A stretch of 62,758 nucleotides of DNA, filler included, from Octopus bimaculoides (lineage: Eukaryota): the NCBI RefSeq assembly GCF_001194135.2. It is 7 parts of 5 records of this genome, joined end to end, with 100 filler letters (N's around TTAATTAATTAA, not from the genome) between each part and the next. Parts side by side here need not be neighbours in the genome. Positions count along the whole stretch, not along the records: positions 1 to 14,655 come from NC_068988.1; 6 more parts are not named here. One strand, given 5' to 3'. Numbering within the stretch: position 1 is the stretch's first letter; every line of letters begins with the position of its first letter. A program made the position numbers and the translations under genes. The notes below the pieces were generated by a model that had not been told where the DNA came from, did not search any database, and saw only the letters and a list, made by a program, of their open reading frames with translations. Positions 422 to 14,655 of the stretch are shown in pieces.

Positions 422-539
422 AGGCAGCGTGATTCGCCATACTCGTTATCCCATCCGTAGGACGGGAAGTTTCGCGGTTTGCCCAGTTGGACCTCTCTGC
501 CTTCAAGAGCCACCAACGAGTTCGGACCAACAGGTTTGC
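422..539 (-). CDS. ovoA: OvoA exon (6th visible), start of the FGE-sulfatase-like domain: (G)KPVGPNSLVALEGREVQLGKPRNFPSYGWDNEYGESRC
   Basis: Flanked by tcatgtag| acceptor and |gtaagt donor. Phase 1 to 2, compatible with the preceding exon. LGKP..FPSYGWDNEYG is a characteristic OvoA motif (family knowledge). The gene continues left of the window. Confidence 0.93.
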
Positions 540-552
540 CTACATGAAACAT

Positions 553-601
<49 letters not shown>
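553..601. repeat. (CAT)n microsatellite in ovoA intron. Representative of dozens of SSRs: (AAT)n 1728-1773 and 40202-40264, (TAGA)n 11025-11082, (ATT)n 18577-18635, (CA)n 56387-56464, (TA)n 58797-58859
   Basis: Direct reading. Confidence 0.95.
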
Positions 602-602
<1 letters not shown>

Positions 603-1575
603 TTGCTACATTGTTTTGTTATATTGTAATGGTCTGTACGAAGGGGCTATACCCTAATCCTTCACTGGTCTTCCGGTGCTAGTTAAGTTCAATGCCATTA
701 ACGTTCCTCTTGAACTGTCGGAAATCAGTTACTACAGGAAACACTTGTGCGAACCTGGTATTCCAAAGAACTGACATTCTTCGAACACACGGCTGGGCAT
801 TGTGGTTAATTTGAGATGAAAGGGAAGAAGAGATAAGTGATTGGAAAAGTGCCTGAAGAGAAATGTCAGAAGACCAACCAGCTCCAAGAACCAGGGGCCA
901 CAGTAGTTGTGGTGAAATGTCACAGGAGAGGACAAAACATAACTGTGGAACAGTGTTTGGAGTATGCTAGTGAGTGAACGCATGCCAGTCAGTCAGTCAG
1001 TCAGTTACCTTCAGAATGTCAGTAACATTGTCCCAGATTTGGGAGTAGCATTCAATTGTAGGTTAGCCTCAATGTTGATAAATATGATATCTGCTTTTTT
1101 ACGAAACCTATGAAAGGCATTCGGAATATATCCTAGCGTCACACGATACATACTAACTGCTAAGCGGATTGTAACTCCACATGGTACCTGTTTACAGCTA
1201 GGTGGGCTGTGTCATCATATGCCACTTATTTGACTTATTTTGGATGTTGCAAGCATTGGAGCCTCTTCTCCGATTTGAAGATACCTTCCTCTTCCCCTGT
1301 TTCTAGCCTCGGGGACCCAGCCCTGTAATGGGTCAGTGGGCACAGCTATTCCCATTGACTAATAGATAAGAAAGAGGTGGACTGTCCGTCATCACGGTAT
1401 CTCTTTACAGCTAAATGTTGTGTTCTTTACATACATTTTGCTACTGGATAAAATCTACGTGCTAATGATATATATTTACACTAAAGTGATACAGTCATCA
1501 ACTCGGTCAAACGTGTTTCACGTAAAACAAATTTAAAAGTTTGAAATCTGAAATAGCAAAGTTCTAAAATTTTAC

Positions 1576-1702
1576 CGGTTTTCATTTCAGCATATACCCA
1601 TGTTGGAGGCTTCGTCACTACGTTGACTGGGAGTTGACGAATAAGGACAGAAGATGTTTCTAGATGAATACGTTCGTGCGCCATGCCCATCAGAAGGGCC
1701 CA
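1576..1702 (-). CDS. ovoA: OvoA exon (5th visible) with the iron-binding HX3HXE motif: WALLMGMAHERIHLETSSVLIRQLPVNVVTKPPTWVYAEMKT
   Basis: ttttctatacag| acceptor and |gtaaaa donor, 127 nt, phase 0 to 1. HERIHLETSSVLIRQLP is the OvoA signature. Confidence 0.96.
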
Positions 1703-1726
1703 CTGTATAGAAAAGTAGATATCATC

Positions 1727-1773
<47 letters not shown>

Positions 1774-1985
1774 CCTTTCTACTAAAGGTACAAGGCCTGA
1801 AATTTGGGCGGGGAGAACTAGTCGATTACATCGACCCCAGTGTATCACTGGTACTTTATTCATCGACCCCGAAAGGATGAAAGGCAAAGTCAACCTCAGC
1901 AGAATTTGAACTCAGAACGTAGAGACAGACGAAATACTGCTAAGCATTTGGCCCGGCGTGCTAACGATTCAGCCAGCTCACTACC

Positions 1986-1988
<3 letters not shown>
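1774..1988 (-). mobile_element. tRNA-derived SINE, family A (AAGGYGGYGAGCTGGCAG...GAGTTCAAATTC...CGACCCC)
   Basis: Reverse complement carries A/B-box-like head. More than 10 related copies in the window. Confidence 0.85.
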
Positions 1989-2033
<45 letters not shown>

Positions 2034-2437
2034 GTGATGATGATGATGATGATGATGATAAGGAAGGGGAAGATAGTCGTAGGGTTGGTATTGGTAGTTG
2101 TGGTGATAATTGTGGCAGAAGTAATTGTAATTATGGTGGTGCCGATGATGAGTGAGGTAGAATTAGTTTAGGTGGTTGTGATGTTGGTGTTGGTAGGAGC
2201 GGTGTCGGTATTGGTGGTGATGGTGAGAGAAGAAGCGACGGTGGTAGTGGTGGAAGTCATGATGGCGGTGGAAGTCATGATAATGGTGATGATGATGATG
2301 ATGATGATGATGATCGTGGTGTATTCAGTAATGGTGGTTGTGGTGATGATGATTGCGATGATGATTGTGATGATGGAGGGTGCTGGTGATGGTGGGGAGG
2401 AATGTGATGACTATGGTGATGGTATTATTACTCTTAC

Positions 2438-2581
2438 CCATTTGCTCTCCATGGTGATGGGAAGTTCAAGCGGTGTATCATTGATCATTTGCAGTATGGC
2501 GTTTTTCACCTGCCGTCTGTAGGCTGTCACGTCAACCACTTCCGGCCACACGATGGGTTTACCATCAATCCGCTGGTTAAC
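2438..2581 (-). CDS. ovoA: OvoA exon (4th visible): VNQRIDGKPIVWPEVVDVTAYRRQVKNAILQMINDTPLELPITMESKW
   Basis: actaacag| acceptor and |gtaaga donor, 144 nt, phase 0 to 0. WP...V..YR..V and LPIT....WW match the OvoA DinB-like domain. Confidence 0.93.
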
Positions 2582-2671
2582 CTGTTAGTCGAGAAAAGTA
2601 TTGAAAAATGAGTGACTGACTAGGCATAAATTAAAGAATAAAGCCGATTGTGACTTAACCGCAACAGTATT

Positions 2672-2876
2672 CTTTTCTTCTCTAGGCACAAAGCCTGAAA
2701 TTTTTTGGGAAGGGGCCCAGTCGATTAGATCGACCCCAGCACGCAACTGGTGCTTATTTTATCGACCCCGAAGGGATGAAAAGCACAGTCGACCTCAGCG
2801 GAATTTGAACTCAGAACATAAAGACAGACGAAATAACACTAAGCATTGCGCCCGGCGTGCTAACGTTTCCGCCAGT
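2672..2876 (-). mobile_element. SINE family A copy
   Basis: Strong similarity to 1774-1988. Confidence 0.85.
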
Positions 2877-4078
2877 ATTAAACCACAAAAACATTATGAA
2901 TTTCTAATATCGGCACTAATACATTTTAAACCATTAATTTTGGAGGAGTTAGGCCAGTCATGAGCAAATTGTGGCCCGCGGGATTGTGTGGATAAAAAAA
3001 ATTATATTAATCTTTTTTAGTNNNNNNNNNNNNNNNNNNNNNNNNNNNNNNNNNNNNNNNNNNNNNNNNNNNNNNNNNNNNNNNNNNNNNNNNNNNNNNN
3101 NNNNNNNNNNNNNNNNNNNNNNNNNNNNNNNNNNNNNNNNNNNNNNNNNNNNNNNNNNNNNNNNNNNNNNNNNNNNNNNNNNNNNNNNNNNNNNNNNNNN
3201 NNNNNNNNNNNNNNNNNNNNNNNNNNNNNNNNNNNNNNNNNNNNNNNNNNNNNNNNNNNNNNNNNNNNNNNNNNNNNNNNNNNNNNNNNNNNNNNNNNNN
3301 NNNNNNNNNNNNNNNNNNNNNNNNNNNNNNNNNNNNNNNNNNNNNNNNNNNNNNNNNNNNNNNNNNNNNNNNNNNNNNNNNNNNNNNNNNNNNNNNNNNN
3401 NNNNNNNNNNNNNNNNNNNNNNNNNNNNNNNNNNNNNNNNNNNNNNNNNNNNNNNNNNNNNNNNNNNNNNNNNNNNNNNNNNNNNNNNNNNNNNNNNNNN
3501 NNNNNNNNNNNNNNNNNNNNNNNNNNNNNNNNNNNNNNNNNNNNNNNNNNNNNNNNNNNNNNNNNNNNNNNNNNNNNNNNNNNNNNNNNNNNNNNNNNNN
3601 NNNNNNNNNNNNNNNNNNNNNNNNNNNNNNNNNNNNNNNNNNNNNNNNNNNNNNNNNNNNNNNNNNNNNNNNNNNNNNNNNNNNNNNNNNNNNNNNNNNN
3701 NNNNNNNNNNNNNNNNNNNNNNNNNNNNNNNNNNNNNNNNNNNNNNNNNNNNNNNNNNNNNNNNNNNNNNNNNNNNNNNNNNNNNNNNNNNNNNNNNNNN
3801 NNNNNNNNNNNNNNNNNNNNNNNNNNNNNNNNNNNNNNNNNNNNNNNNNNNNNNNNNNNNNNNNNNNNNNNNNNNNNNNNNNNNNNNNNNNNNNNNNNNN
3901 NNNNNNNNNNNNNNNNNNNNNNNNNNNNNNNNNNNNNNNNNNNNNNNNNNNNNNNNNNNNNNNNNNNNNNNNNNNNNNNNNNNNNNNNNNNNNNNNNNNN
4001 NNNNNNNNNNNNNNNNNNGTGCGTGCGTGTATGTGTGTGTATCAAAGAGAGAGAGAGAGAATGTGTGTGAGTGAATGT

Positions 4079-4131
<53 letters not shown>

Positions 4132-4397
4132 GGTATGTGTGTCTGTGACTTTGTAGGTATGCATGCTTGCGCATGTGTATGTGTGCGCGCGCATACGTGC
4201 GTATGTGTGTGTGTGTGCGTGTGTGTATATCAATATGTGTATGAATATGTATCCGTTTGAGTTATTTGTGCACGAGGTGTTTGTGTGTGCGTAAGTGTGT
4301 ACGTGTGTATGTGTGTATGTGTGTATGCGTGCGTGCGTGCGCATAATTTAGTGAGTATGTATTTGCACGCTTGTGAGAGGATGTTAGAGACACTTAC

Positions 4398-4466
4398 CGT
4401 ATCGTCCCAGAACATTTCGTCTACACCAGTCTCAAAGATGGTCTCGAACTCGGCATTTATCCGTTT
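4398..4466 (-). CDS. ovoA: OvoA exon (3rd visible): KRINAEFETIFETGVDEMFWDDT
   Basis: tcttgtttccgcacag| acceptor and |gtaagt donor, 69 nt, phase 0 to 0. Contains the GVDEMxWDD motif. Confidence 0.95.
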
Positions 4467-4637
4467 CTGTGCGGAAACAAGAGCATTAATGGTGTTGTTG
4501 TTGTTGTTGTTGATGATGATGATGATGATAATGATGATGGTGGTGGTGGTGAGGGTGAGGGTGGCAGTGGTGTTAGTGACATGGGTGATGTTGGTAATGA
4601 TAGATGCTCTCTGTTTTTCCTTCTTGTGCAAACATAC

Positions 4638-4675
<38 letters not shown>

Positions 4676-4714
4676 AAGAATTTCGTTGAAGAGATTTTCC
4701 TTACTTGCTGAGTT

Positions 4715-5100
4715 GTGGTGAAAAAATATATAACAAAAGAAGGAAAATGCACACAATTTAGATATTTTTAATATTTTATAAACTTGAATATTATGATAGT
4801 CTACGGGTTTCATATTTTGCTACTCATGACTAGGAAATTGGTTGAAATATTGCAATTTCGAGTATCTTAAGGAATTTTTTGTCCATGTTGTTTGTATGAG
4901 AGTTTGTTTGTACAATACAAACAACATGAACTAAAAACTTCTTAAGTTACAACAAAATTGCAATATTTTCATCAATTTCCCAATCTTGATTAGCAAAACG
5001 TGAGACTGGTAGGCTATCATAATATTCTATCTTACAAAATACATTAAAAATATCTAAATTGTGTGCATTTTCCTTCTTTTGTTATGTATTTTTTCACTAT
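4715..5100. mobile_element. Foldback / MITE-like long imperfect palindrome
   Basis: About 4715-4897 is the reverse complement of about 4914-5100, e.g. gtggtgaaaaaatatataacaaaagaaggaaaatgcacac versus gtgtgcattttccttcttttgttatgtattttttcactat. Confidence 0.75.
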
Positions 5101-5108
5101 CTACCTAC

Positions 5109-5152
<44 letters not shown>

Positions 5153-5429
5153 ATAATCATTATTATTACTATTATTTCGCTTAGGCATTGAGATACTAAT
5201 ATTAATACCCTGGTGTTAAAATTGTGTACATATTCTGCACAACAATGCGTCAGTCGAGAGCAGAGCAGTAATATGAAAATGAAAATGAAAATGATAAGGG
5301 AATAAGAAATTGTGCCAGGAACTTCATTAGCTTACAGATGATGTTCCTGCTATAAGATGCAATGCACTCATAGTTGAGTGCTTGTGTGTCACTCTAGAGC
5401 TTCACCGCCACGTCAAAAAGATTTGAAGT

Positions 5430-6160
5430 GTTGTGAATAAAGTGAGAGTGACCGGAGAATATTACACCAGACCTAGAAAAATATGGCAATCGGAACACTT
5501 GTCTTGCAGCAAGTCAATATCTCAGGATGCATTTGCAGTACCAATACTGATACCAACATTTGGGGTACTTGACTGGTCCACAGAGGAAATCCACTCATAG
5601 TCATTAAATCTCGCAAGATCCTCACAGCAACAGGAAACTTCCACAAAAGCAGTAATATCGACAGGCTCTAAGAATTGATGAAGGCGGCTGAGATTTGGGA
5701 TTAGTGCAGTCAGCCTTTTAATGTCGTATAGTTTCTGTCAGACAGATCCTGTTAAACAACAGCAGCATAAATAAATACATCAACCTAGCGCTGATAAACG
5801 AAGACAACTTCCTACGTGTCGATCTTCCTGACACCTGCCATGCAACCCCAAAACAGCTGGACTAACATGCCTCAAAGAAGACCTGGATGTGAAACGCTCA
5901 GCATTCCAAAAGAAGACGAAGCAGTGGTACGTTTTCTGAAGACTTGAAGATGACAGCATCGGCATAATGTGAAATAGAGGAGCCCTTGAAGCCCCAAGAT
6001 GCAATCGAAGATGTTGATTATATTACATTTTAATAGAAGACATCACACATGTAATCAGCAGCTGCTCCAAAATGTCGTCAAGGTACTACCTCCCAATGCG
6101 ACATAACGTTACCGCTAAAACATTATACAATACAATCCGAAAAACGATTGTCCCGGGATG
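5430..6160 (+). mobile_element. R4/Dong-like (REL-endonuclease) LINE remnant
   Basis: Translates to EYYTRPRKIWQSE...AFAVPILIPTFGVLDW...ILTATGNFHK and EDITHVISSCSKMSSRYYLPMRH, with frameshifts. Confidence 0.7.
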
Positions 6161-7249
6161 AATATAGAAAACCCTCTGTTATTGAATATGTACATAAATG
6201 TCAATAGAAGGAACACTAGTGGAATATTCCCATCAAAACTTCTACCAAATGCAAACACAACAGGCTGCATATCGTTGTTTGGGACAGAGAAAAACAAGTA
6301 TGTATGTTATAGAGGTCAGCTGATGTTAATATCTTTCCCCAAATCAAAGAGAAAGCAGACAACTACAGACAACTACTTCGAAACTTCAGCTCCTGCATCC
6401 AGATTATAAATTCACATTTATACCAATAATAATTGGTGCATTTCATTTTGTGGAGCGACAATTTGGAAAAGTTAGAGTTTTCAGAAAAAGATCTCAGCCA
6501 GATAATACTCACTTTACGCATACAATCTGTAAGCGAAGAGTAAAAATATGTAAGAGTATACTGAAGATCAAAACGGGAATTTTCTTTTGTTATCTACATT
6601 CCAAAGATGGAGCTTTGTATCTTTGTCAGAAACCAGGACCTTTCTTACAGGAAAATTTTAAATAATTAAGAGTAGAAAATAACATGCATACATGCACACA
6701 CACACACACACACAGACACACACACAGACACACACATACACACACACACACATACACACACACACGCACGCACGTACACATGCACACAAGAACGCACGCA
6801 CGCAGATACATACATACATACATACATACATACATGCATGCATGCATACATACATACATACATACATACATACATACATACATAGTGGTCTAAATTTAAA
6901 TGTATACACAACATTGTTTCTATATTTTTGACCGGCTCTTTCTCTTTCGGTGAGGAATTTGAAAAATATTAGCAGAATCTAGTGACAGCTACAAGCATAC
7001 ATACATACATACATACATATCAATTAAGTATATCAATTAAGTATATCATTCGTCATTTAAGTATATATGAGCCTGTCTAGATATGCAAATATATGCATGA
7101 AAATACATACATAAGATAAAACATATGAATCTGCACGTATACATACATATATACATACATACATACATACACACATACATACACACACACATACATACAT
7201 ACATACATATATACATGCATACATGCGTACATACAAAAATACCATGTTG

Positions 7250-7536
7250 ATGTTAAAATTCCAATGAAGGAGCCTTGGATCTAGGTTAGAAACTTTATTG
7301 GCAAGAAATCTTGAAATAAAACTCAGAGCACTCAGAGAGCGCAAACCTCCACCAAGGCAGAATCCTTGTCCGGTACCGGATCGATCCCAAAATCTAATCA
7401 GTTTGTGACAGTCACGAGACCAAACATCCCTCAAAGTTTCATCCAGCAGTTCTTGAGATATTTTGTCTACAGACAAACAAACAAACAAACACGACTGAAA
7501 ACAATACCTCCGCCTTCGCTAAGGTGGGGGTAATAA

Positions 7537-7540
<4 letters not shown>
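7250..7540. repeat. Interspersed non-autonomous repeat with CCTCC(A/G)CC subterminal motifs
   Basis: aaactcagagcactcagagagcgcaaacctccaccaaggc ... acctccgccttcgctaaggtgggggtaat. Family not assigned. Confidence 0.4.
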
Positions 7541-7584
<44 letters not shown>

Positions 7585-7882
7585 TTGTGTGTGTGTGTGT
7601 GTGTACCATTTTAATATAAATCTTTCTGTTGTTAGTCAAATTCCAGTGAATTCTGCTTTGCTAGAGACCAATTTTTTTTATAAGAATTAAAATATTGTTA
7701 AAAGATAAACTACATACATCCATCCATACATACATACATACACATGCATACATAAATACATACTGACAGACAGACAGACAGAGGTAGATACGTAAATAAT
7801 TGCACAAATATACGCATTCATACATATATACCTACATGAATGCACACAGATCTGAAACGTTTGAACCAAAATTAGAACCTAC

Positions 7883-7995
7883 TGTTAGTAGATCAGCCAA
7901 CATAAGCTTATTGACGTAGACTGCCGAAGTGTGTCCGTAGTAGAAGATTAGTGGCAGTCTTAATCTGTCTGGATAAAGATATAGAGCCGAGTCAT
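7883..7995 (-). CDS. ovoA: OvoA exon (2nd visible): (D)DSALYLYPDRLRLPLIFYYGHTSAVYVNKLMLADLLT
   Basis: ttcttaattccag| acceptor and |gtaggt donor, 113 nt, phase 1 to 0. LRxPLIFYYGHT..xNKL motif, whose His is an iron ligand in characterised OvoA. Confidence 0.96.
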
Positions 7996-8094
7996 CTGGA
8001 ATTAAGAACAGATAAACTGACATATACATGTGTATGTGTGTGAACATATATTCGCATAATTTTGTGTATGTATATGTATGTTTGTCCATGTATA

Positions 8095-9400
8095 TATCAA
8101 GTCATTAAAAATGAAACCGAAAGTTTATTTTACTTTATCTCAACAAAAAGCAATGCAGTTAATCAAAGTATGCACCTAAATTATCAACACAATTTTGCCA
8201 TTTTATCGGTAGCATATTTATGCCGGCAGCGAAGAATTCTGGAGAGTGAGAGGCGATGAAATCACGAAAGGCTGTTTTTGTATCGTCTTCAGATTTAAAG
8301 TTTTTTCTTGCGAAAAGTTGTCTAATGCCTGGAAAACGTGATAGTCACTTGGTGCAAGGTCTGGTGAATATGGTGGATGACAGAGTACTTCCAAGATCAG
8401 TTCCTGTAACCTGAGTAGCGTTCATTGTGCAGCATGTGGTCGAGCATTGTCTTGCAAGAGAATTGGCCTGTCTCTATTGACCAATCTCGGTTGTTTAATT
8501 GCAAGTTCACTCATCATTTCATCCCATTAGTTGATGTATACATCCGCTGTAATTGACTTACCAGGTCTCATGAAGCTGTAGTGGACGACACCAGCGCTGG
8601 ATCACCATACAGACAGCATTAGCATTTTTCGATGAATATTCTTTTTTGGATTATGTTTTGACACTTCGTCTCTATTCAACCACAATGCAGAACACTTGCC
8701 ATTGTTGAAAAGAATCCATTTTACATTACATGTAACAATATGATGCAAAAATATTCGCTTTTATGCTGTGACAGAAAAGAACAGCAAGTTTCAAGACGAC
8801 GTGGCATTTGATGCTCGTTCAGTTCGTGTGGTACCCACTTGTCCAGCTTCTTTACCATGCCGATTTGTTTCAGATGATCCAAAACAGTTGGAATTGAAAC
8901 ATCAAACCTTGCTGCTAACTCACGCATAGTTCGAGATGGGTCCGCTTCCACTACAGTTTCCAACTTATCCCTATCTACCTTGCTCTCGGGTCTTCCACGG
9001 GGCTGATTTTCAAGAGTAAAGTCACCAGATCGGAACTTCTCAAACCATCGATGTACAGTGCGCTCATTCGCCACATCTTTACCAATCAGCTCATTGATAT
9101 TTCGAGCTGTCTGGGTTGCATTGGTTCCACGACGGAACTCATATTTATAAACAACACAAGCGGAAACCAGAGGAACATAATTAATAACCACGCTCAAAAA
9201 CAAATATATACATATATTCTTCTACATTTATAGAAATTCCAAATATATAAATATAAAAATACCTATAAATAGATAAATATCGATGTGATACATAAAACAC
9301 AGTGAATTTTAGATTTAAAAGTTATAATACATTGGTGTAATAAAAATTTCAGATGATAAAACATTAAAAGGACGTACTAAAATACCATGAAAATACTACA
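8095..9400 (-). mobile_element. Decayed mariner (DD34D) transposon
   Basis: YEFRRG..HTH, WVPHEL (ORF 8721-9203), and downstream frameshifted DNARPH and HPPYSPDLAPSDY motifs. Ends approximate. Confidence 0.92.
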
Positions 9401-9689
9401 AAAATTTTAAAATTCTATCTACGGGCCGGTTCAGAGGCGTGCCAAGTAATATGATATATTTCATATTTTTAAAACTGACACTCTCCTCATCAGGATGTTT
9501 TCACACAATACAGAAAAAAAACAACAAAAAAACAAAACAAAAAAACAAAAAACAAAACAAAAACAAATGCAGAAATACAATTATACAATTACATACCAGC
9601 CTGAAATAAATCTTTCAAAAAAGATGATGGTGCGTATTTTACTTTTGAGATGACTGTGTTTATATGTATGTTAACTGATATCTAACTGT

Positions 9690-10642
9690 TCAAAGAAGAC
9701 TTCGTAGCGGCTACTCGTGAAAATGGACAAAGTTTGGCATCGTAGTGTTATCAAGTACCTGTTGGAAAATAGTTTAGCCCTTCCGCCTCCAAGTACATTT
9801 ATGCTGATATGGTTGCTACATTAGGGGATGACACTCCAGATTTACCAATAGTACAAAAGTGGGTGACTGAATATTGGGGTGGGGGAGAGTTTCTGCTCGG
9901 TGGATGCCACGTCTTCTGACACTTGATCCCAAGCGCACCAGGCTGATTCACATCACAGGAAAATCTGACACTGCTTGAAGCAGATCCAGCTGATTTCCTT
10001 GAATGTTTCCTAAGCCAGAATGAGTGCCACGTTCATCGCTTTTAGAAACAAAGAGACAATCCATGCAGTGGAAACAATCATTCTTCACCTGTTCCAAAGA
10101 AAGCCAAGGTCGTTTCATCTGCATGGAAGGTGACTACCTCATTTTGGGGACATGCAAAGGGCATTGTGCTTATTAACTATCTTCAAAAGGGCCACACCAT
10201 TAATGGAGAGTACTATACCAACTTGCTGAGGCAGTTATGAAAGGCTATCAAGACCATCAAGAAAACTAACGAAAGGGGTCTTGTTTCGAGAGGCCAATGC
10301 TCCAGCACACAGGTTCATGGTTTCAATATCTGGTGTGCGTGACTGTGGCCTTGAATTGACTGATCATCCTCCTTATTCTCCTAATTTGGCTCTGTCTGAC
10401 TCATCTGAAAAAACACTTGGCTGAGAACTAGTATTGCAGTGATGATAGCATCATATCTTCTGTTGATTACTTTTTTGACTAACAGGGTGAAAGCATTTTC
10501 ACCAACGGGATACATGATCTGGAACACCGATGGAAGAAGTGTGTGTACTGCAAGAGGGACTACGTTGGAAGATAAACTTTGTTTGGTCACATTCCATGAG
10601 AGTATCTTGGTCATCCTATGAGCTTTTCAGCCGACCTTCGTA
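9690..10642 (+). mobile_element. Decayed mariner of a second lineage with its right TIR
   Basis: ADMVATLGDD..., PKKAKVVSS, HPPYSPNLALSD. 3' TIR ...cctatgagcttttcagccgaccttcgTA ends at 10642. Confidence 0.88.
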
Positions 10643-11023
10643 TGTGTGTGTGTATACATATATACATACATATATATATGTATATATATATACATANNNN
10701 NNNNNNTTTGGTCACATTCCATGAGAGTATCTTGGTCATCCTATGAGCTTTTCAGCCGACCTTCGTATGTGTGTGTGTATACATATATACATACATATAT
10801 AACGTGAGAGAGTTAGGGGTTGGGGGTTCAACCCACTAAGGGATAGTATCTATCCAGTATACTGCTGGGAGGGTACCCAATTATTGCTACACTAGTGCTA
10901 TACTAGGTGCAATCAATGGGAGCGGGTAAAAGTGGAGGTTTTACCCAAAATTTGTGTAACAATTAGAAAATGGAGGATAATATATAGAAAGAGAGAGAGA
11001 CAGAGACAAACAGACAGACAGAC

Positions 11024-11083
<60 letters not shown>

Positions 11084-14000
11084 TTAGTGTCTGTATGCAC
11101 ACACATATATATAAACATCAGGTCATTAAGAACGAAATGTCCGATTTTCTTTTGCATCAAGTTTGGCAGTTTTTAACTTTAGCGTGTTATCCTGACAATT
11201 ATTTGCTTTACAATATTGAAGAATGACATCATTACTTTTCGAAATGTAAATCATGGTGTCTGATTATATTGTGAGTTTTCTCTTGTAAATCAATTTTTGT
11301 GATTATTAAGCGGAATATAGCTCACTGCAACTCCAGTCTGTTAACACTAACAATCTCAAAATAGAGCAGTGTATTTTATATTTCACGCACACACACACAC
11401 ACNNNNNNNNNNNNNNNNNNNNNNNNNNNNNNNNNNNNNNNNNNNNNNNNNNNNNNNNNNNNNNNNNNNNNNNNNNNNNNNNNNNNNNNNNNNNNNNNNN
11501 NNNNNNNNNNNNNNNNNNNNNNNNNNNNNNNNNNNNNNNNNNNNNNNNNNNNNNNNNNNNNNNNNNNNNNNNNNNNNNNNNNNNNNNNNNNNNNNNNNNN
11601 NNNNNNNNNNNNNNNNNNNNNNNNNNNNNNNNNNNNNNNNNNNNNNNNNNNNNNNNNNNNNNNNNNNNNNNNNNNNNNNNNNNNNNNNNNNNNNNNNNNN
11701 NNNNNNNNNNNNNNNNNNNNNNNNNNNNNNNNNNNNNNNNNNNNNNNNNNNNNNNNNNNNNNNNNNNNNNNNNNNNNNNNNNNNNNNNNNNNNNNNNNNN
11801 NNNNNNNNNNNNNNNNNNNNNNNNNNNNNNNNNNNNNNNNNNNNNNNNNNNNNNNNNNNNNNNNNNNNNNNNNNNNNNNNNNNNNNNNNNNNNNNNNNNN
11901 NNNNNNNNNNNNNNNNNNNNNNNNNNNNNNNNNNNNNNNNNNNNNNNNNNNNNNNNNNNNNNNNNNNNNNNNNNNNNNNNNNNNNNNNNNNNNNNNNNNN
12001 NNNNNNNNNNNNNNNNNNNNNNNNNNNNNNNNNNNNNNNNNNNNNNNNNNNNNNNNNNNNNNNNNNNNNNNNNNNNNNNNNNNNNNNNNNNNNNNNNNNN
12101 NNNNNNNNNNNNNNNNNNNNNNNNNNNNNNNNNNNNNNNNNNNNNNNNNNNNNNNNNNNNNNNNNNNNNNNNNNNNNATATATGTATGTATGTATGTATG
12201 TATGTATATATATATATATATGTATGTATGTATGTATGTATATATATATATATATACAAAGCTTGAAGCACGTGTATCGCGATATCCTTTGTGTTCTGTT
12301 TTCAATTTATGTTTGATATATATATATATATGCGCTAAGCCTGTTCCTGTTACTCGTTGTTTGAAATAAAATCTCAATGTTACAGCCCAAATCGACCTAC
12401 ATTATTTTCAGATATGACTAACTAATAAGACTTTGAACACTCAACTTATGAACTTCTTAAATATTCTTAACTAAGTCAGAGAATGAGAATGCTGCATCGG
12501 ATTGTTTTTGGAAGGTTGTGTATGCCAGTTCTGAGTCAGTTTGTGGAGGATAAGATGATACACAAAACTAAAGATTAGCTATCGAATCTAGGTCAGAAGT
12601 TCAGCATAATGTACGAATTAGATAAGCCTGATAAAATTGTTTTCAACCGATTGTGGACGGTATTGTAACTTATTTAAAACTGCCAGTTACTGACTTATCT
12701 TTTCATGTGTGAGCGTGCGCGTGCGTGGGTGTTTCTGAGTGTGTGTGTGTGTTTGCGTGCGTGCGAGCGTGTGAGCGTGCGTGCGTGTGTATGTGTAGGT
12801 ATGTATGCATAATGATTAACTGAACATTTCAGCTACACCTTTGCAATGCATTTGTCACAGGACAAGATAGCATATCATGGGTTACAGTATTTCTTCCTTT
12901 TTATAGACAATAGAATGTGCGATGACGCAATTCATAGCCCAGTATGCCATGTTTTTATAAATTTTGTCTTTAAAGAAAATTGTGTTTTTTTTTTTCTGAG
13001 AAGTTACTGCAGCGAATGTCTTTTTTACGTTTTAATGTACTCAAATATTTAAATGTAGCTGCACGCAGCTTTAGCTTAATTGCCATTGCTAAATTTGTCG
13101 TTAACTAATTAATTTCAGCTTGACAAAGCTTTGGACATGCCAGCAAATTTATTATTTGCTGTTTACATATAAGAAAGGCAAATCTAATTGGTCTATGAAC
13201 GATGTATTTGGTATCTGTAGCTGATGAAGAGTAACAACGCAGAAATACGTGTCCTGTAGTCTCACAACGTTATTCTAGCCCAGCGCGTTGTGTTTTCACA
13301 CACATTGTTGATAACGAGAACTTCATTTCTGTGACAGCTGCTGTAGCGAAGGTATTTGTACGTTTAATTCTACATGAATGTGTTAAATATAAAAGTACAC
13401 ATCTTTATTATACCGTAAGATAAAAGACAAAACTGAACAATATTATAAATATCACATACATATATAATTTTATTGCGACAAACTAGGCGTCATGTACTAT
13501 CAAGATTAATCTTCACATATGACCGGTTGGTTGGCTAGATGACTAAATAGCGTTGAAAAATGCACTGAAATAAATATCCACCAGGAGATTTGTCCAGTTG
13601 AATAATGTAACTTTTGTTGTTTAACCCAAGTCAGCCCAGACTGAATAGACCTATTGATCAGTGGATTTTTATAAACTACCATGAACATCCCATCCTTCAA
13701 TCAATCATTTCATATCTAGGCCGTCATAATCCAGTGCGTCTCTCTCTTTNNNNNNNNNNATGTACTATCAAGATTAATCTTCACATATGACCGGTTGGTT
13801 GGCTAGATGACTAAATAGCGTTGAAAAATGCACTGAAATAAATATCCACCAGGAGATTTGTCCAGTTGAATAATGTAACTTTTGTTGTTTAACCCAAGTC
13901 AGCCCAGACTGAATAGACCTATTGATCAGTGGATTTTTATAAACTACCATGAACATCCCATCCTTCAATCAATCATTTCATATCTAGGCCGTCATAATCC

Positions 14001-14232
14001 AGTGCGTCTCTCTCTTTTTTTTTGAGAGAGAGAGAGTGTAGAGTTTAATTTGAAAGAAATTTGCTTGCATTTCTAGCAGATATTGTGGCCCTGTAAAGGC
14101 TCCTACGGTTTGATCGGTGAAGTATTTGCAATGAAGGTTAGCAGGCAGAGAGTGGGAAAACGGGCAGTGAGAGGGTAGAGTAAAGTAAATAATGATAAAA
14201 TCCTGTTAGTAAATATTGTGCGGATTACTCAC

Positions 14233-14297
14233 CGGCTATGGAGGTAAATAGACTTTCGTAGAGATTGTAGCTGTTCAGAAAGTATTCTTGAATATCT
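14233..14297 (-). CDS. ovoA: OvoA exon (1st visible): DIQEYFLNSYNLYESLFTSIA
   Basis: gatttgttccag| acceptor and |gtgagt donor, phase 2 to 1, joining the 7995 exon in frame. I..YF..(S/T)Y.LYESLF is the OvoA N-terminal helix. An in-frame ATG at 14311 is an alternative start. Confidence 0.88.
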
Positions 14298-14655
14298 CTG
14301 GAACAAATCATGGAAGGGATACTATACTTCAGTAAATGTACATACACACACGCACACACGCACACACGCACACACGCGCACACACACACACACACACACA
14401 CGCACATACAAACACACACACGATTGCTTGTTGTGGCCGGTCAGAGAGTGAGCATTGGTTTTGCACCAAAAAAATGTGCTAAGCTGTAAAGGCGATTCGT
14501 CAGACTCAGACTCAAATGACCAGAGGTACATAACCTTTGTGTGTGTGTGTGTGTGTGTGTGTGACTGAGTGTATGTGTGTGTGTGTGTGTGAGTGTGTTT
14601 ATGCACAATTATATACATATAATAAAAAATACATACATATGCACACACACACAAA

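What the first reader, a model, noticed from the sequence alone, without database searches (positions are those of the whole stretch)
422..14297. Cryptic six-exon ovothiol synthase (OvoA) gene hidden among repeats
Seen: six GT-AG exons of 65-144 nt on the minus strand join in phase (2/1, 1/0, 0/0, 0/0, 0/1, 1/2). They give an uninterrupted peptide of about 210 aa containing LRLPLIFYYGHT, GVDEMFWDD, HERIHLETSS and FPSYGWDNEYG. Established: these are OvoA motifs (non-haem iron 5-histidylcysteine sulfoxide synthase with DinB-like, FGE-like and methyltransferase domains). Ovothiol occurs in cephalopod eggs, and the octopus branchial-heart iron pigment adenochrome contains 5-thiolhistidine. Inference: this locus could supply 5-thiohistidine for both pathways. 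The gene family is known; its role in octopus pigment or iron chemistry is the open question.
Basis: partly seen in the sequence, partly recalled or inferred. Interest (0 to 1): 0.75.

Follow-up and report, generated by a model that had tools for sequence, protein, structure and literature searches.

The report
Octopus ovothiol synthase gene, exons 2–7
The window holds six real, correctly spliced exons (coding exons 2–7 of about 20) of an octopus's ovothiol synthase (OvoA) gene, which is already annotated in sister octopus species and already discussed in the literature, so the find is correct but ordinary.

Summary
Six minus-strand exons (14233-14297, 7883-7995, 4398-4466, 2438-2581, 1576-1702, 422-539; 65/113/69/144/127/118 nt) have AG/GT borders.

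- **Family:** the peptide matches the OvoA N-terminal model TIGR04344 (E 3.8e-83) far better than EgtB (7e-8).
- **Active site:** it carries the three iron-ligand histidines.
- **Nearest relatives:** it is 98% identical, without gaps, to residues 26-237 of an annotated Octopus vulgaris protein. It is 87% identical to the Argonauta orthologue.
- **Orthologous locus:** the O. sinensis locus (LOC115215235) is syntenic. It has the same exon lengths and splice sites, 97.5% exon identity against 79-93% in introns, and pN/pS of about 0.2.
- **Gene structure:** Aplysia and Elysia share every intron position, and Aplysia every phase.
- **Assembly gaps:** all four lie in introns and hide no exon.

The gene is neither "cryptic" nor six-exon. 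The orthologue has about 20 coding exons over 64 kb. Exon 1 lies about 7 kb upstream of the piece and the catalytic Tyr and methyltransferase exons lie downstream of it. Castellano et al. 2016 already list an Octopus bimaculoides OvoA and mention adenochrome. The window adds nothing on pigment chemistry. Verdict: already known, low interest.

The parts
14233..14297 (-). E1, which is coding exon 2 of OvoA (65 nt, phase 2/1). It encodes (Q)DIQEYFLNSYNLYESLFTSIA(D).
   Evidence: Acceptor TTGTTCCAG, donor GTGAGT. 65/65 nt identical to O. sinensis L003 12218-12282 with the same splice sites. The Aplysia exon is also 65 nt with the same phases.
7883..7995 (-). E2, which is coding exon 3 (113 nt, phase 1/0). 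It encodes DDSALYLYPDRLRLPLIFYYGHTSAVYVNKLMLADLLT and holds the first iron-ligand His (codon 7931-7933; His68 in octopus numbering, His74 in P. lividus OvoA).
   Evidence: 108/113 nt identical to O. sinensis. His is invariant in alignments A1 and A2. The Aplysia exon is 113 nt with the same phases.
4398..4466 (-). E3, which is coding exon 4 (69 nt, phase 0/0). It encodes KRINAEFETIFETGVDEMFWDDT and includes the conserved Met (Met108 of P. lividus OvoA).
   Evidence: (68/69 nt identical). The Aplysia exon is 69 nt.
2438..2581 (-). E4, which is coding exon 5 (144 nt, phase 0/0). It encodes VNQRIDGKPIVWPEVVDVTAYRRQVKNAILQMINDTPLELPITMESKW.
   Evidence: Acceptor CTAACAG at 2582-2583. The in-frame alternative acceptor, which would start the exon at 2572 (135 nt), is rejected. 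The octopus proteins read WDDT-VNQRIDG, O. sinensis uses the same acceptor, and the Aplysia exon (141 nt) starts right after WDDT.
1576..1702 (-). E5, which is coding exon 6 (127 nt, phase 0/1). It encodes WALLMGMAHERIHLETSSVLIRQLPVNVVTKPPTWVYAEMKT(G) and holds the second and third iron-ligand His (codons 1676-1678 and 1664-1666; His164 and His168 in octopus numbering).
   Evidence: (126/127 nt identical). The Aplysia exon is 127 nt with the same phases.
422..539 (-). E6, which is coding exon 7 (118 nt, phase 1/2). It encodes (G)KPVGPNSLVALEGREVQLGKPRNFPSYGWDNEYGESRCL, the linker and the start of the FGE-sulfatase-like domain.
   Evidence: 115/118 nt identical. Aplysia has 121 nt with the same phases. 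The next exon is 2.4 kb further on in O. sinensis, so it lies outside this piece.
7996..14232 (-). Intron between E1 and E2 (6237 nt as assembled). It holds three assembly gaps, two of them flanked by duplicated contig ends, a degenerate mariner copy, and a block inverted relative to O. sinensis.
2582..4397 (-). Intron between E3 and E4 (1816 nt as assembled). It holds the 997-N gap, which corresponds to about 2.65 kb of exon-free intron in O. sinensis (L003 23618-26272).

Best explanation
The window is part of the OvoA orthologue of an Octopus species. The species is close to O. vulgaris and O. sinensis but is neither of them; O. bimaculoides is plausible but is only an inference.

The window carries coding exons 2-7 of a gene of about 20 coding exons, transcribed from the minus strand. 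These exons encode the DinB-like four-helix-bundle domain with the three histidines that bind the catalytic non-haem Fe(II), plus the first 40 or so residues of the FGE-sulfatase-like domain.

By orthology with characterised OvoA enzymes, the full protein uses O2 to couple L-cysteine to C5 of the L-histidine imidazole, giving 5-histidylcysteine sulfoxide. A separate PLP-dependent beta-lyase then releases 5-thiohistidine. The C-terminal methyltransferase-like domain of OvoA may N-methylate that product to ovothiol A.

Shown here: exon structure, family assignment, iron ligands, orthology and purifying selection. Inferred: enzyme activity, the product in octopus, and any role in eggs or in adenochrome.
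For: - **Exons and frame:**
- **Family:** TIGR04344 ovoA_Nterm E 3.8e-83, profile positions 16-219, against EgtB 7e-8. The solved OvoA 8KHQ matches at E 4e-55.
- **Nearest proteins:** 207/212 identical to O. vulgaris CAI9726561.1 residues 26-237. The same 90% cluster holds O. sinensis XP_029640331.1. Argonauta is 87% identical.
- **Synteny with O. sinensis CM016866.1:** intron identity 79-93%. Exon lengths and splice sites are identical, 620/636 exon nt are identical, and there are 9 synonymous against 6 non-synonymous codon differences, giving pN/pS of about 0.2.
- **Intron positions:** conserved in Aplysia, together with phases, and in Elysia.
- **Active-site residues in the window peptide:** His74, His169, His173 and Met108 (P. 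lividus numbering from PMC4768315) are invariant.
- **Active-site residues outside the window:** Tyr442, Phe445, His480 and Phe481 are conserved in the octopod orthologues.
- **Full-length orthologue:** O. sinensis scores 590 bits against the 400-bit OvoA cut-off, and only 139 against 360 for EgtB.
Against: - Only about 28% of the coding sequence (212 of about 742 aa) is in the piece. The start codon, the catalytic Tyr and the methyltransferase-like domain cannot be checked for this genome.
- No transcript data could be consulted.
- The N-terminal half alone is almost as similar to the solved EgtB-IV enzymes (8VIH, E 1e-52) as to the solved OvoA. Regiochemistry therefore rests on orthology and on the full-length relatives.
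- The fragment's 279.8 bits are below the 400-bit cut-off, which is set for the whole 444-position domain.
- The source species was not identified directly.
Confidence: 0.93

Rival explanations
1. The gene is an ergothioneine-type sulfoxide synthase (EgtB or Egt1-like, "hercynine oxygenase"), as the RefSeq name of the O. sinensis orthologue ("ergothioneine biosynthesis protein 1-like") suggests. It would then make a 2-thiohistidine derivative rather than 5-thiohistidine.
For: The RefSeq and other automatic names say so. The window peptide matches the solved EgtB-IV (8VIH) at E 1e-52, nearly as well as the solved OvoA at 4e-55.
Against: - NCBIfam gives the window peptide 279.8 bits for OvoA against 32 for EgtB.
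- It gives the full O. sinensis protein 590 bits (cut-off 400) for OvoA against 139 (cut-off 360) for EgtB.
- The octopod proteins are about 740 aa with a C-terminal methyltransferase-like domain, as in OvoA. The EgtB-IV chains are 463-468 aa.
- The octopod proteins align end to end with P. lividus OvoA and keep its named active-site residues.
- The thiohistidine reported from O. vulgaris eggs is 5-thiolhistidine (Rossi et al. 1985, as cited in PMC4768315).
Confidence: 0.03
2. In the source genome this copy is a decaying or non-functional gene. The six exons happen to be intact, but there is damage outside the piece.
For: Only 6 of about 20 coding exons are visible. The assembly around them is poor, with four gaps, duplicated contig ends and a block inverted relative to O. 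sinensis.
Against: - All six exons are open and all ten splice sites are canonical and identical to those in O. sinensis.
- Exons are 97.5% identical against 79-93% for introns.
- pN/pS is about 0.2.
- All conserved catalytic residues in range are kept.
Confidence: 0.04

Closest known systems
Octopus sinensis LOC115215235 (XP_029640331.1) and Octopus vulgaris CAI9726561.1 / CAI9726560.1
   Same: These are orthologues. The window peptide is 207/212 identical to the O. vulgaris protein. The O. sinensis locus is syntenic, with identical exon lengths and splice sites for exons 2-7.
   Different: The source is a different species: 16 nt differences in 636 nt of exon and 7-21% divergence in introns. 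The window lacks exon 1 and exons 8 to about 20. A 1.7-kb intronic block is inverted relative to O. sinensis.
Sea-urchin OvoA (Paracentrotus lividus and S. purpuratus; Castellano et al. 2016, PMC4768315)
   Same: Same three-domain enzyme and multi-exon gene (19 exons in S. purpuratus). The window peptide is 57% identical over this region. The iron ligands His74, His169, His173 and Met108 are conserved.
   Different: The methyltransferase motif I is VGCGCGR in urchins but LGSSSGR in octopods. That region is outside the window.
Gastropod OvoA genes (Aplysia californica LOC101855341, Elysia chlorotica EGW08_016848)
   Same: 58-61% protein identity. In Aplysia every intron position and phase in this region is identical, with exons of 65/113/69/141/127/121 nt. 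Elysia breaks its exons at the same residues; its exact lengths and phases were not computed.
   Different: Exon 5 is 3 nt shorter and exon 7 is 3 nt longer in Aplysia. Introns are shorter.
Bacterial OvoA with a solved structure (PDB 8KHQ)
   Same: The DinB-like plus FGE-like sulfoxide synthase fold family. E 4e-55 over residues 31-231, including HERIH-ETSSVLIRQ and YGWDNEYG.
   Different: A prokaryotic single-ORF gene. It has a 5-residue deletion relative to the metazoan VNQRIDGKP loop.
EgtB-IV sulfoxide synthases (PDB 8VIH, 8VIG)
   Same: Nearly equal similarity in the N-terminal half (E 1e-52).
   Different: The chains are 463-468 aa, so there is no room for the C-terminal methyltransferase-like domain. 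The depositors name them EgtB (ergothioneine pathway). The octopod orthologues have the OvoA architecture and pass the OvoA cut-off, not the EgtB one.

Membership tests
OvoA (5-histidylcysteine sulfoxide synthase, NCBIfam TIGR04344 + TIGR04345) | Sequence match to the OvoA N-terminal equivalog domain, and a better match than to EgtB or SenA | tested here: met
   The window peptide scores 279.8 bits (E 3.8e-83) over profile positions 16-219 of 444, against 32 bits for EgtB. The 400-bit cut-off cannot be reached by half a domain. The full O. sinensis orthologue scores 590 bits.
OvoA (5-histidylcysteine sulfoxide synthase, NCBIfam TIGR04344 + TIGR04345) | Three-histidine iron site in the DinB-like domain (His74, His169, His173 of P. 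lividus OvoA; the HxxxH motif) | tested here: met
   His43, His139 and His143 of the spliced peptide (codons 7931-7933, 1676-1678, 1664-1666) align with them and are invariant. The residue list comes from PMC4768315.
OvoA (5-histidylcysteine sulfoxide synthase, NCBIfam TIGR04344 + TIGR04345) | FGE-sulfatase-like domain with the active-site Tyr (Tyr442 of P. lividus OvoA) and its neighbours Phe445, His480, Phe481 | tested here: inconclusive
   The window ends about 40 residues into this domain, so it cannot be tested for this genome. In the O. sinensis, O. vulgaris and Argonauta orthologues Tyr438, Phe441, His476 and Phe477 are present.
OvoA (5-histidylcysteine sulfoxide synthase, NCBIfam TIGR04344 + TIGR04345) | C-terminal SAM-dependent methyltransferase domain | tested here: inconclusive
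   This domain is outside the window. The O. sinensis orthologue has a C-terminal domain that matches TIGR04345 weakly: 58.6 bits against a cut-off of 170. Sea-urchin OvoA scores only 65.6. Motif I is atypical (LGSSSGR).
OvoA (5-histidylcysteine sulfoxide synthase, NCBIfam TIGR04344 + TIGR04345) | Metazoan OvoA gene structure (shared intron positions and phases) | tested here: met
   All five internal junctions and both outer borders coincide in position with Aplysia, Elysia and O. sinensis. Phases were computed for Aplysia and are identical; exon lengths and splice sites are identical in O. sinensis.
OvoA (5-histidylcysteine sulfoxide synthase, NCBIfam TIGR04344 + TIGR04345) | Catalysis: O2- and Fe(II)-dependent C5-S bond formation between His and Cys | not testable with these tools
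   This needs a recombinant enzyme assay.
EgtB (ergothioneine sulfoxide synthase, TIGR03440) | Sequence match at or above the curated cut-off | tested here: not met
   32 bits for the window peptide and 139 bits for the full O. sinensis orthologue, against a cut-off of 360.

The most novel reading that the evidence does not exclude
This reading concerns sequence outside the window, seen only in the orthologues.

The methyltransferase-like domain of octopod OvoA may be catalytically dead. Its SAM-binding motif I reads LGSSSGR where sea urchins have VGCGCGR. If so, octopus OvoA would stop at unmethylated 5-thiohistidine. That would explain why O. vulgaris eggs and adenochrome are reported to contain 5-thiolhistidine rather than ovothiol A, and one gene would feed both the egg thiol pool and the branchial-heart iron pigment.

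The evidence is weak. The middle glycine of the motif is also replaced in Capitella, Brachionus, Lineus and gastropods, including Conus conA. The octopus domain scores about as well as the sea-urchin one on TIGR04345.
Probability: 0.12. Interest if true: 0.45.

Novelty: already known. Interest (0 to 1): 0.1.

Why it matters
It matters little beyond annotation. The result shows that the first-stage reader can recover a correct multi-exon model from raw sequence. It gives exact coordinates for OvoA exons 2-7 on this gapped scaffold, where an automatic model may be partial.

It also shows that the RefSeq label "ergothioneine biosynthesis protein 1-like" for the octopus orthologue points to the wrong pathway. 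By NCBIfam's own cut-offs the protein is an OvoA.

It was posed in 2016, and this window provides no new handle on it.

Tried and rejected
1. **Alternative exon borders.** An exon 4 of 135 nt starting at 2572 and an exon 5 of 105 nt ending at 1598 were tried. The short exon 5 breaks the frame into exon 6. The short exon 4 deletes VNQ, which every octopod protein has.
2. **First coding exon inside the piece.** The minus-strand peptide NAHSLTGH (about 14443-14466) resembles the true N-terminus MAHLLTGH, but it has no DNA similarity to the real exon 1 of O. sinensis. That exon lies 7.1 kb upstream of exon 2. The resemblance is chance.
3. **Alternative start.** The in-frame ATG just upstream of E1 (MICSR-DIQEYF) is CAC AAT in O. 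sinensis, so it is not conserved.
4. **No cephalopod hits in the first protein search.** I first read this as "not annotated". It was a retrieval artefact, because only proteins of 369 aa or fewer were listed. A search with the C-terminal part of the Solemya protein found the O. vulgaris, O. sinensis and Argonauta proteins at once.
5. **Species identification through the mariner ORF.** This gave only 63-71% hits to O. sinensis SETMAR-like proteins among many arthropod hits. It is suggestive, not decisive.
6. **Degenerate methyltransferase motif as an explanation for unmethylated 5-thiolhistidine.** The comparison with 34 metazoan OvoAs shows the motif is variable in many phyla.
7. **RNA genes.** Rfam and tRNA scans of both strands found nothing.
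8. **Next exon downstream of E6.** None is in 1-421. It is 2.4 kb away in O. sinensis.
Full report
**What is in the sequence.** Reading the minus strand around them gives six open segments bounded by canonical acceptors (polypyrimidine tract plus AG) and GT donors:

| Exon | Window coordinates | Length (nt) |
|---|---|---|
| E1 | 14233-14297 | 65 |
| E2 | 7883-7995 | 113 |
| E3 | 4398-4466 | 69 |
| E4 | 2438-2581 | 144 |
| E5 | 1576-1702 | 127 |
| E6 | 422-539 | 118 |

Joined, they give 636 nt. My own first borders for E4 (135 nt) and E5 (105 nt) were wrong. The short E5 breaks the frame.

**The assembly gaps.** All four N runs are intronic. Run 3022-4018 is in the E3-E4 intron. Runs 10697-10706, 11403-12177 and 13750-13759 are in the E1-E2 intron. 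No exon is cut by a gap, so frame continuity across the Ns does not matter for the coding sequence. The remaining risk was an exon hidden in a gap.

That risk is excluded. The peptide aligns without a missing block across both gapped introns to mollusc, amphioxus and bacterial homologues, and without a single gap to the O. vulgaris protein. In the O. sinensis, Aplysia and Elysia genes the exons on either side are consecutive exons.

The two 10-N gaps are flanked by exact duplicates: 13492-13749 equals 13760-14017, and 10582-10676 equals 10707-10801. These are unmerged contig ends, a scaffolding artefact. The 997-N gap stands for about 2.65 kb in O. sinensis, so its stated length is probably too short.

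**What the exons encode.**
- NCBIfam places the peptide in TIGR04344, the N-terminal domain of 5-histidylcysteine sulfoxide synthase. The score is 279.8 bits (E 3.8e-83), contiguous over profile positions 16-219 of 444. EgtB reaches only 32 bits.
- Among solved structures the best match is the OvoA 8KHQ (E 4e-55). The EgtB-IV enzymes 8VIH and 8VIG follow closely at 1e-52 and 1e-43.
- A full scan of 1.84 billion representative proteins finds 1290 relatives. The best is a 764-aa protein of the bivalve Solemya velum (60% identity) that itself passes the OvoA cut-off with 633 bits.
- The three iron-binding histidines and the conserved Met named for P. lividus OvoA (His74, His169, His173, Met108; PMC4768315) are all present in the window peptide and invariant in the alignment.

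**Whose gene it is.** The first word-indexed protein search returned only short proteins (369 aa or fewer) and no cephalopod. That proved to be a retrieval artefact. Searching with the C-terminal part of the Solemya protein brought up three octopod proteins:
- Octopus vulgaris CAI9726561.1.
- Its cluster mate, Octopus sinensis XP_029640331.1, named "ergothioneine biosynthesis protein 1-like", LOC115215235.
- Argonauta hians GAB1600403.1.

The window peptide is 207/212 identical with no gap to O. vulgaris residues 26-237, and 87% identical to Argonauta.

The O. sinensis locus (CM016866.1, fetched as L003) is collinear with the window at 79-93% identity through the introns. Its exons 2-7 have the same lengths and the same splice-site sequences. 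620 of 636 exon bases are identical. Nine codon differences are synonymous and six are not, which gives pN/pS of about 0.2.

The window is therefore the orthologous locus of a congeneric octopus that is neither O. sinensis nor O. vulgaris. O. bimaculoides is a reasonable guess but I could not test it.

**Independent support for the splice model.** No RNA-seq could be consulted, but the gene structure is conserved far beyond cephalopods. In Aplysia californica the corresponding exons are 65, 113, 69, 141, 127 and 121 nt with identical phases. Elysia chlorotica breaks at the same residues. This also settles the border of E1: the intron before DIQEYF is ancient.

**What is not in the window.** In O. 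sinensis the gene spans 64 kb with about 20 coding exons. Exon 1 (MAHLLTGHLTFTSLKQLDTSQCTKQ) lies 7.1 kb upstream of exon 2. The piece extends only 358 bp beyond E1. The next exon after E6 lies 2.4 kb downstream, and the piece extends only 421 bp. Two look-alikes inside the piece are chance: the peptide NAHSLTGH near 14450, and an ATG just before E1.

The catalytic Tyr and the methyltransferase-like domain are therefore out of reach for this genome. In the octopod orthologues Tyr438, Phe441, His476 and Phe477 are conserved. A C-terminal domain is present that matches TIGR04345 weakly: 58.6 bits, compared with 65.6 for sea-urchin OvoA.

**How it most likely works.** This is inferred by orthology with characterised OvoA enzymes; only the sequence features are shown here.
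1. The DinB-like domain encoded by these exons holds Fe(II) through three histidines.
2. Together with the FGE-like domain, it activates O2 and couples cysteine sulfur to C5 of histidine, giving 5-histidylcysteine sulfoxide.
3. A separate beta-lyase then yields 5-thiohistidine.
4. The C-terminal domain may methylate that product to ovothiol A.

I put 0.93 on "functional OvoA orthologue, exons 2-7", 0.03 on an ergothioneine-type enzyme and 0.04 on a copy damaged outside the piece.

**Comparison with what is known.** Castellano et al. 2016 (PMC4768315) already list an OvoA for O. bimaculoides (KOF75235). They note OvoA in cephalopods, cite 5-thiolhistidine from O. vulgaris eggs, and state that ovothiol is a component of adenochrome. 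Later reviews repeat the chemistry but report no genetic test.

"Cryptic" holds only in the sense that the exons make up 5% of a piece in which 16% is tandem repeat, with microsatellites 14-120 nt from every exon.

**A side lead.** Motif I of the methyltransferase-like domain reads LGSSSGR in octopods, against VGCGCGR in sea urchins. A dead methyltransferase would fit the unmethylated 5-thiolhistidine reported from octopus. However, the same position varies in Capitella, Brachionus, Lineus and gastropods, so the evidence is weak. I give it 0.12.

**Verdict.** The feature is a known gene in a known family at its expected orthologous locus. Interest is low.

Noticed in passing
window 13492-13749 and 13760-14017; 10582-10676 and 10707-10801: Both 10-N gaps are flanked by exact duplicates (258 bp and 95 bp). 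These are unmerged overlapping contig ends, an assembly artefact inside the E1-E2 intron.
   Followed up: yes
window 9603-11302: This block aligns in reverse orientation to O. sinensis L003 15574-16882, while its neighbours are collinear. One end abuts the 775-N gap and the other (9157-9603) does not. It is either a real intronic inversion or a mis-oriented contig.
   Followed up: partly
window 3022-4018: The 997-N gap corresponds to about 2655 bp of O. sinensis intron (L003 23618-26272). Either the gap length is underestimated by about 1.6 kb or O. sinensis has an insertion.
   Followed up: partly
window 8218-9203 (-), and 10281-10424 (+): A degenerate mariner / Mos1-type (SETMAR-like) transposase broken into several frames: an HTH_48 part at 8721-9203 and a ...PPYSPDLAPSDYH... 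part at 8218-8394. The best named hits include O. sinensis SETMAR-like proteins at 63-71%. The copy is present at the orthologous site in O. sinensis, so the insertion is old. A second small fragment (PPYSPNLALSD) lies at 10281-10424.
   Followed up: partly
window 2719-2875 and 1820-1996: An interspersed repeat of about 160 bp, SINE-like in size, occurs twice in the window's introns. It has more than ten copies on both strands of the 74-kb O. sinensis locus at 73-89% identity. It was not classified.
   Followed up: no
window 553-602, 1727-1773, 14340-14421: Perfect trinucleotide arrays sit next to splice acceptors: (ATC)x16.7 lies 14 nt upstream of the E6 acceptor and (ATA)x15.7 lies 25 nt upstream of the E5 acceptor. 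A (CA/CACG)n array lies 43 nt upstream of E1. Their length variation might affect splicing. This was not examined.
   Followed up: no
window about 14443-14466 (-): The peptide NAHSLTGH resembles the true N-terminus MAHLLTGH of octopus OvoA. It has no DNA similarity to the real exon 1, and it is conserved as plain intron in O. sinensis. It is a chance match that could mislead an exon hunt.
   Followed up: yes
L003 (O. sinensis CM016866.1), gene LOC115215235: RefSeq names the product "ergothioneine biosynthesis protein 1-like". By NCBIfam cut-offs it is an OvoA (590 bits against 400) and not an EgtB (139 against 360). Isoforms X2-X4 start after the first iron-ligand His and would lack a complete iron site.
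   Followed up: partly
L003-encoded protein P0474, residues about 575-585 (outside the window): The SAM-binding motif I of the C-terminal domain is LGSSSGR in Octopus and Argonauta, against VGCGCGR in sea urchins. The middle glycine is also replaced in several other phyla.
   Followed up: partly
tool behaviour: The word-indexed protein search with a 212-aa query listed only targets of 369 aa or fewer. It missed a 98%-identical 832-aa protein that is in the database. Absence of a hit in that tool should not be read as absence of annotation.
   Followed up: yes
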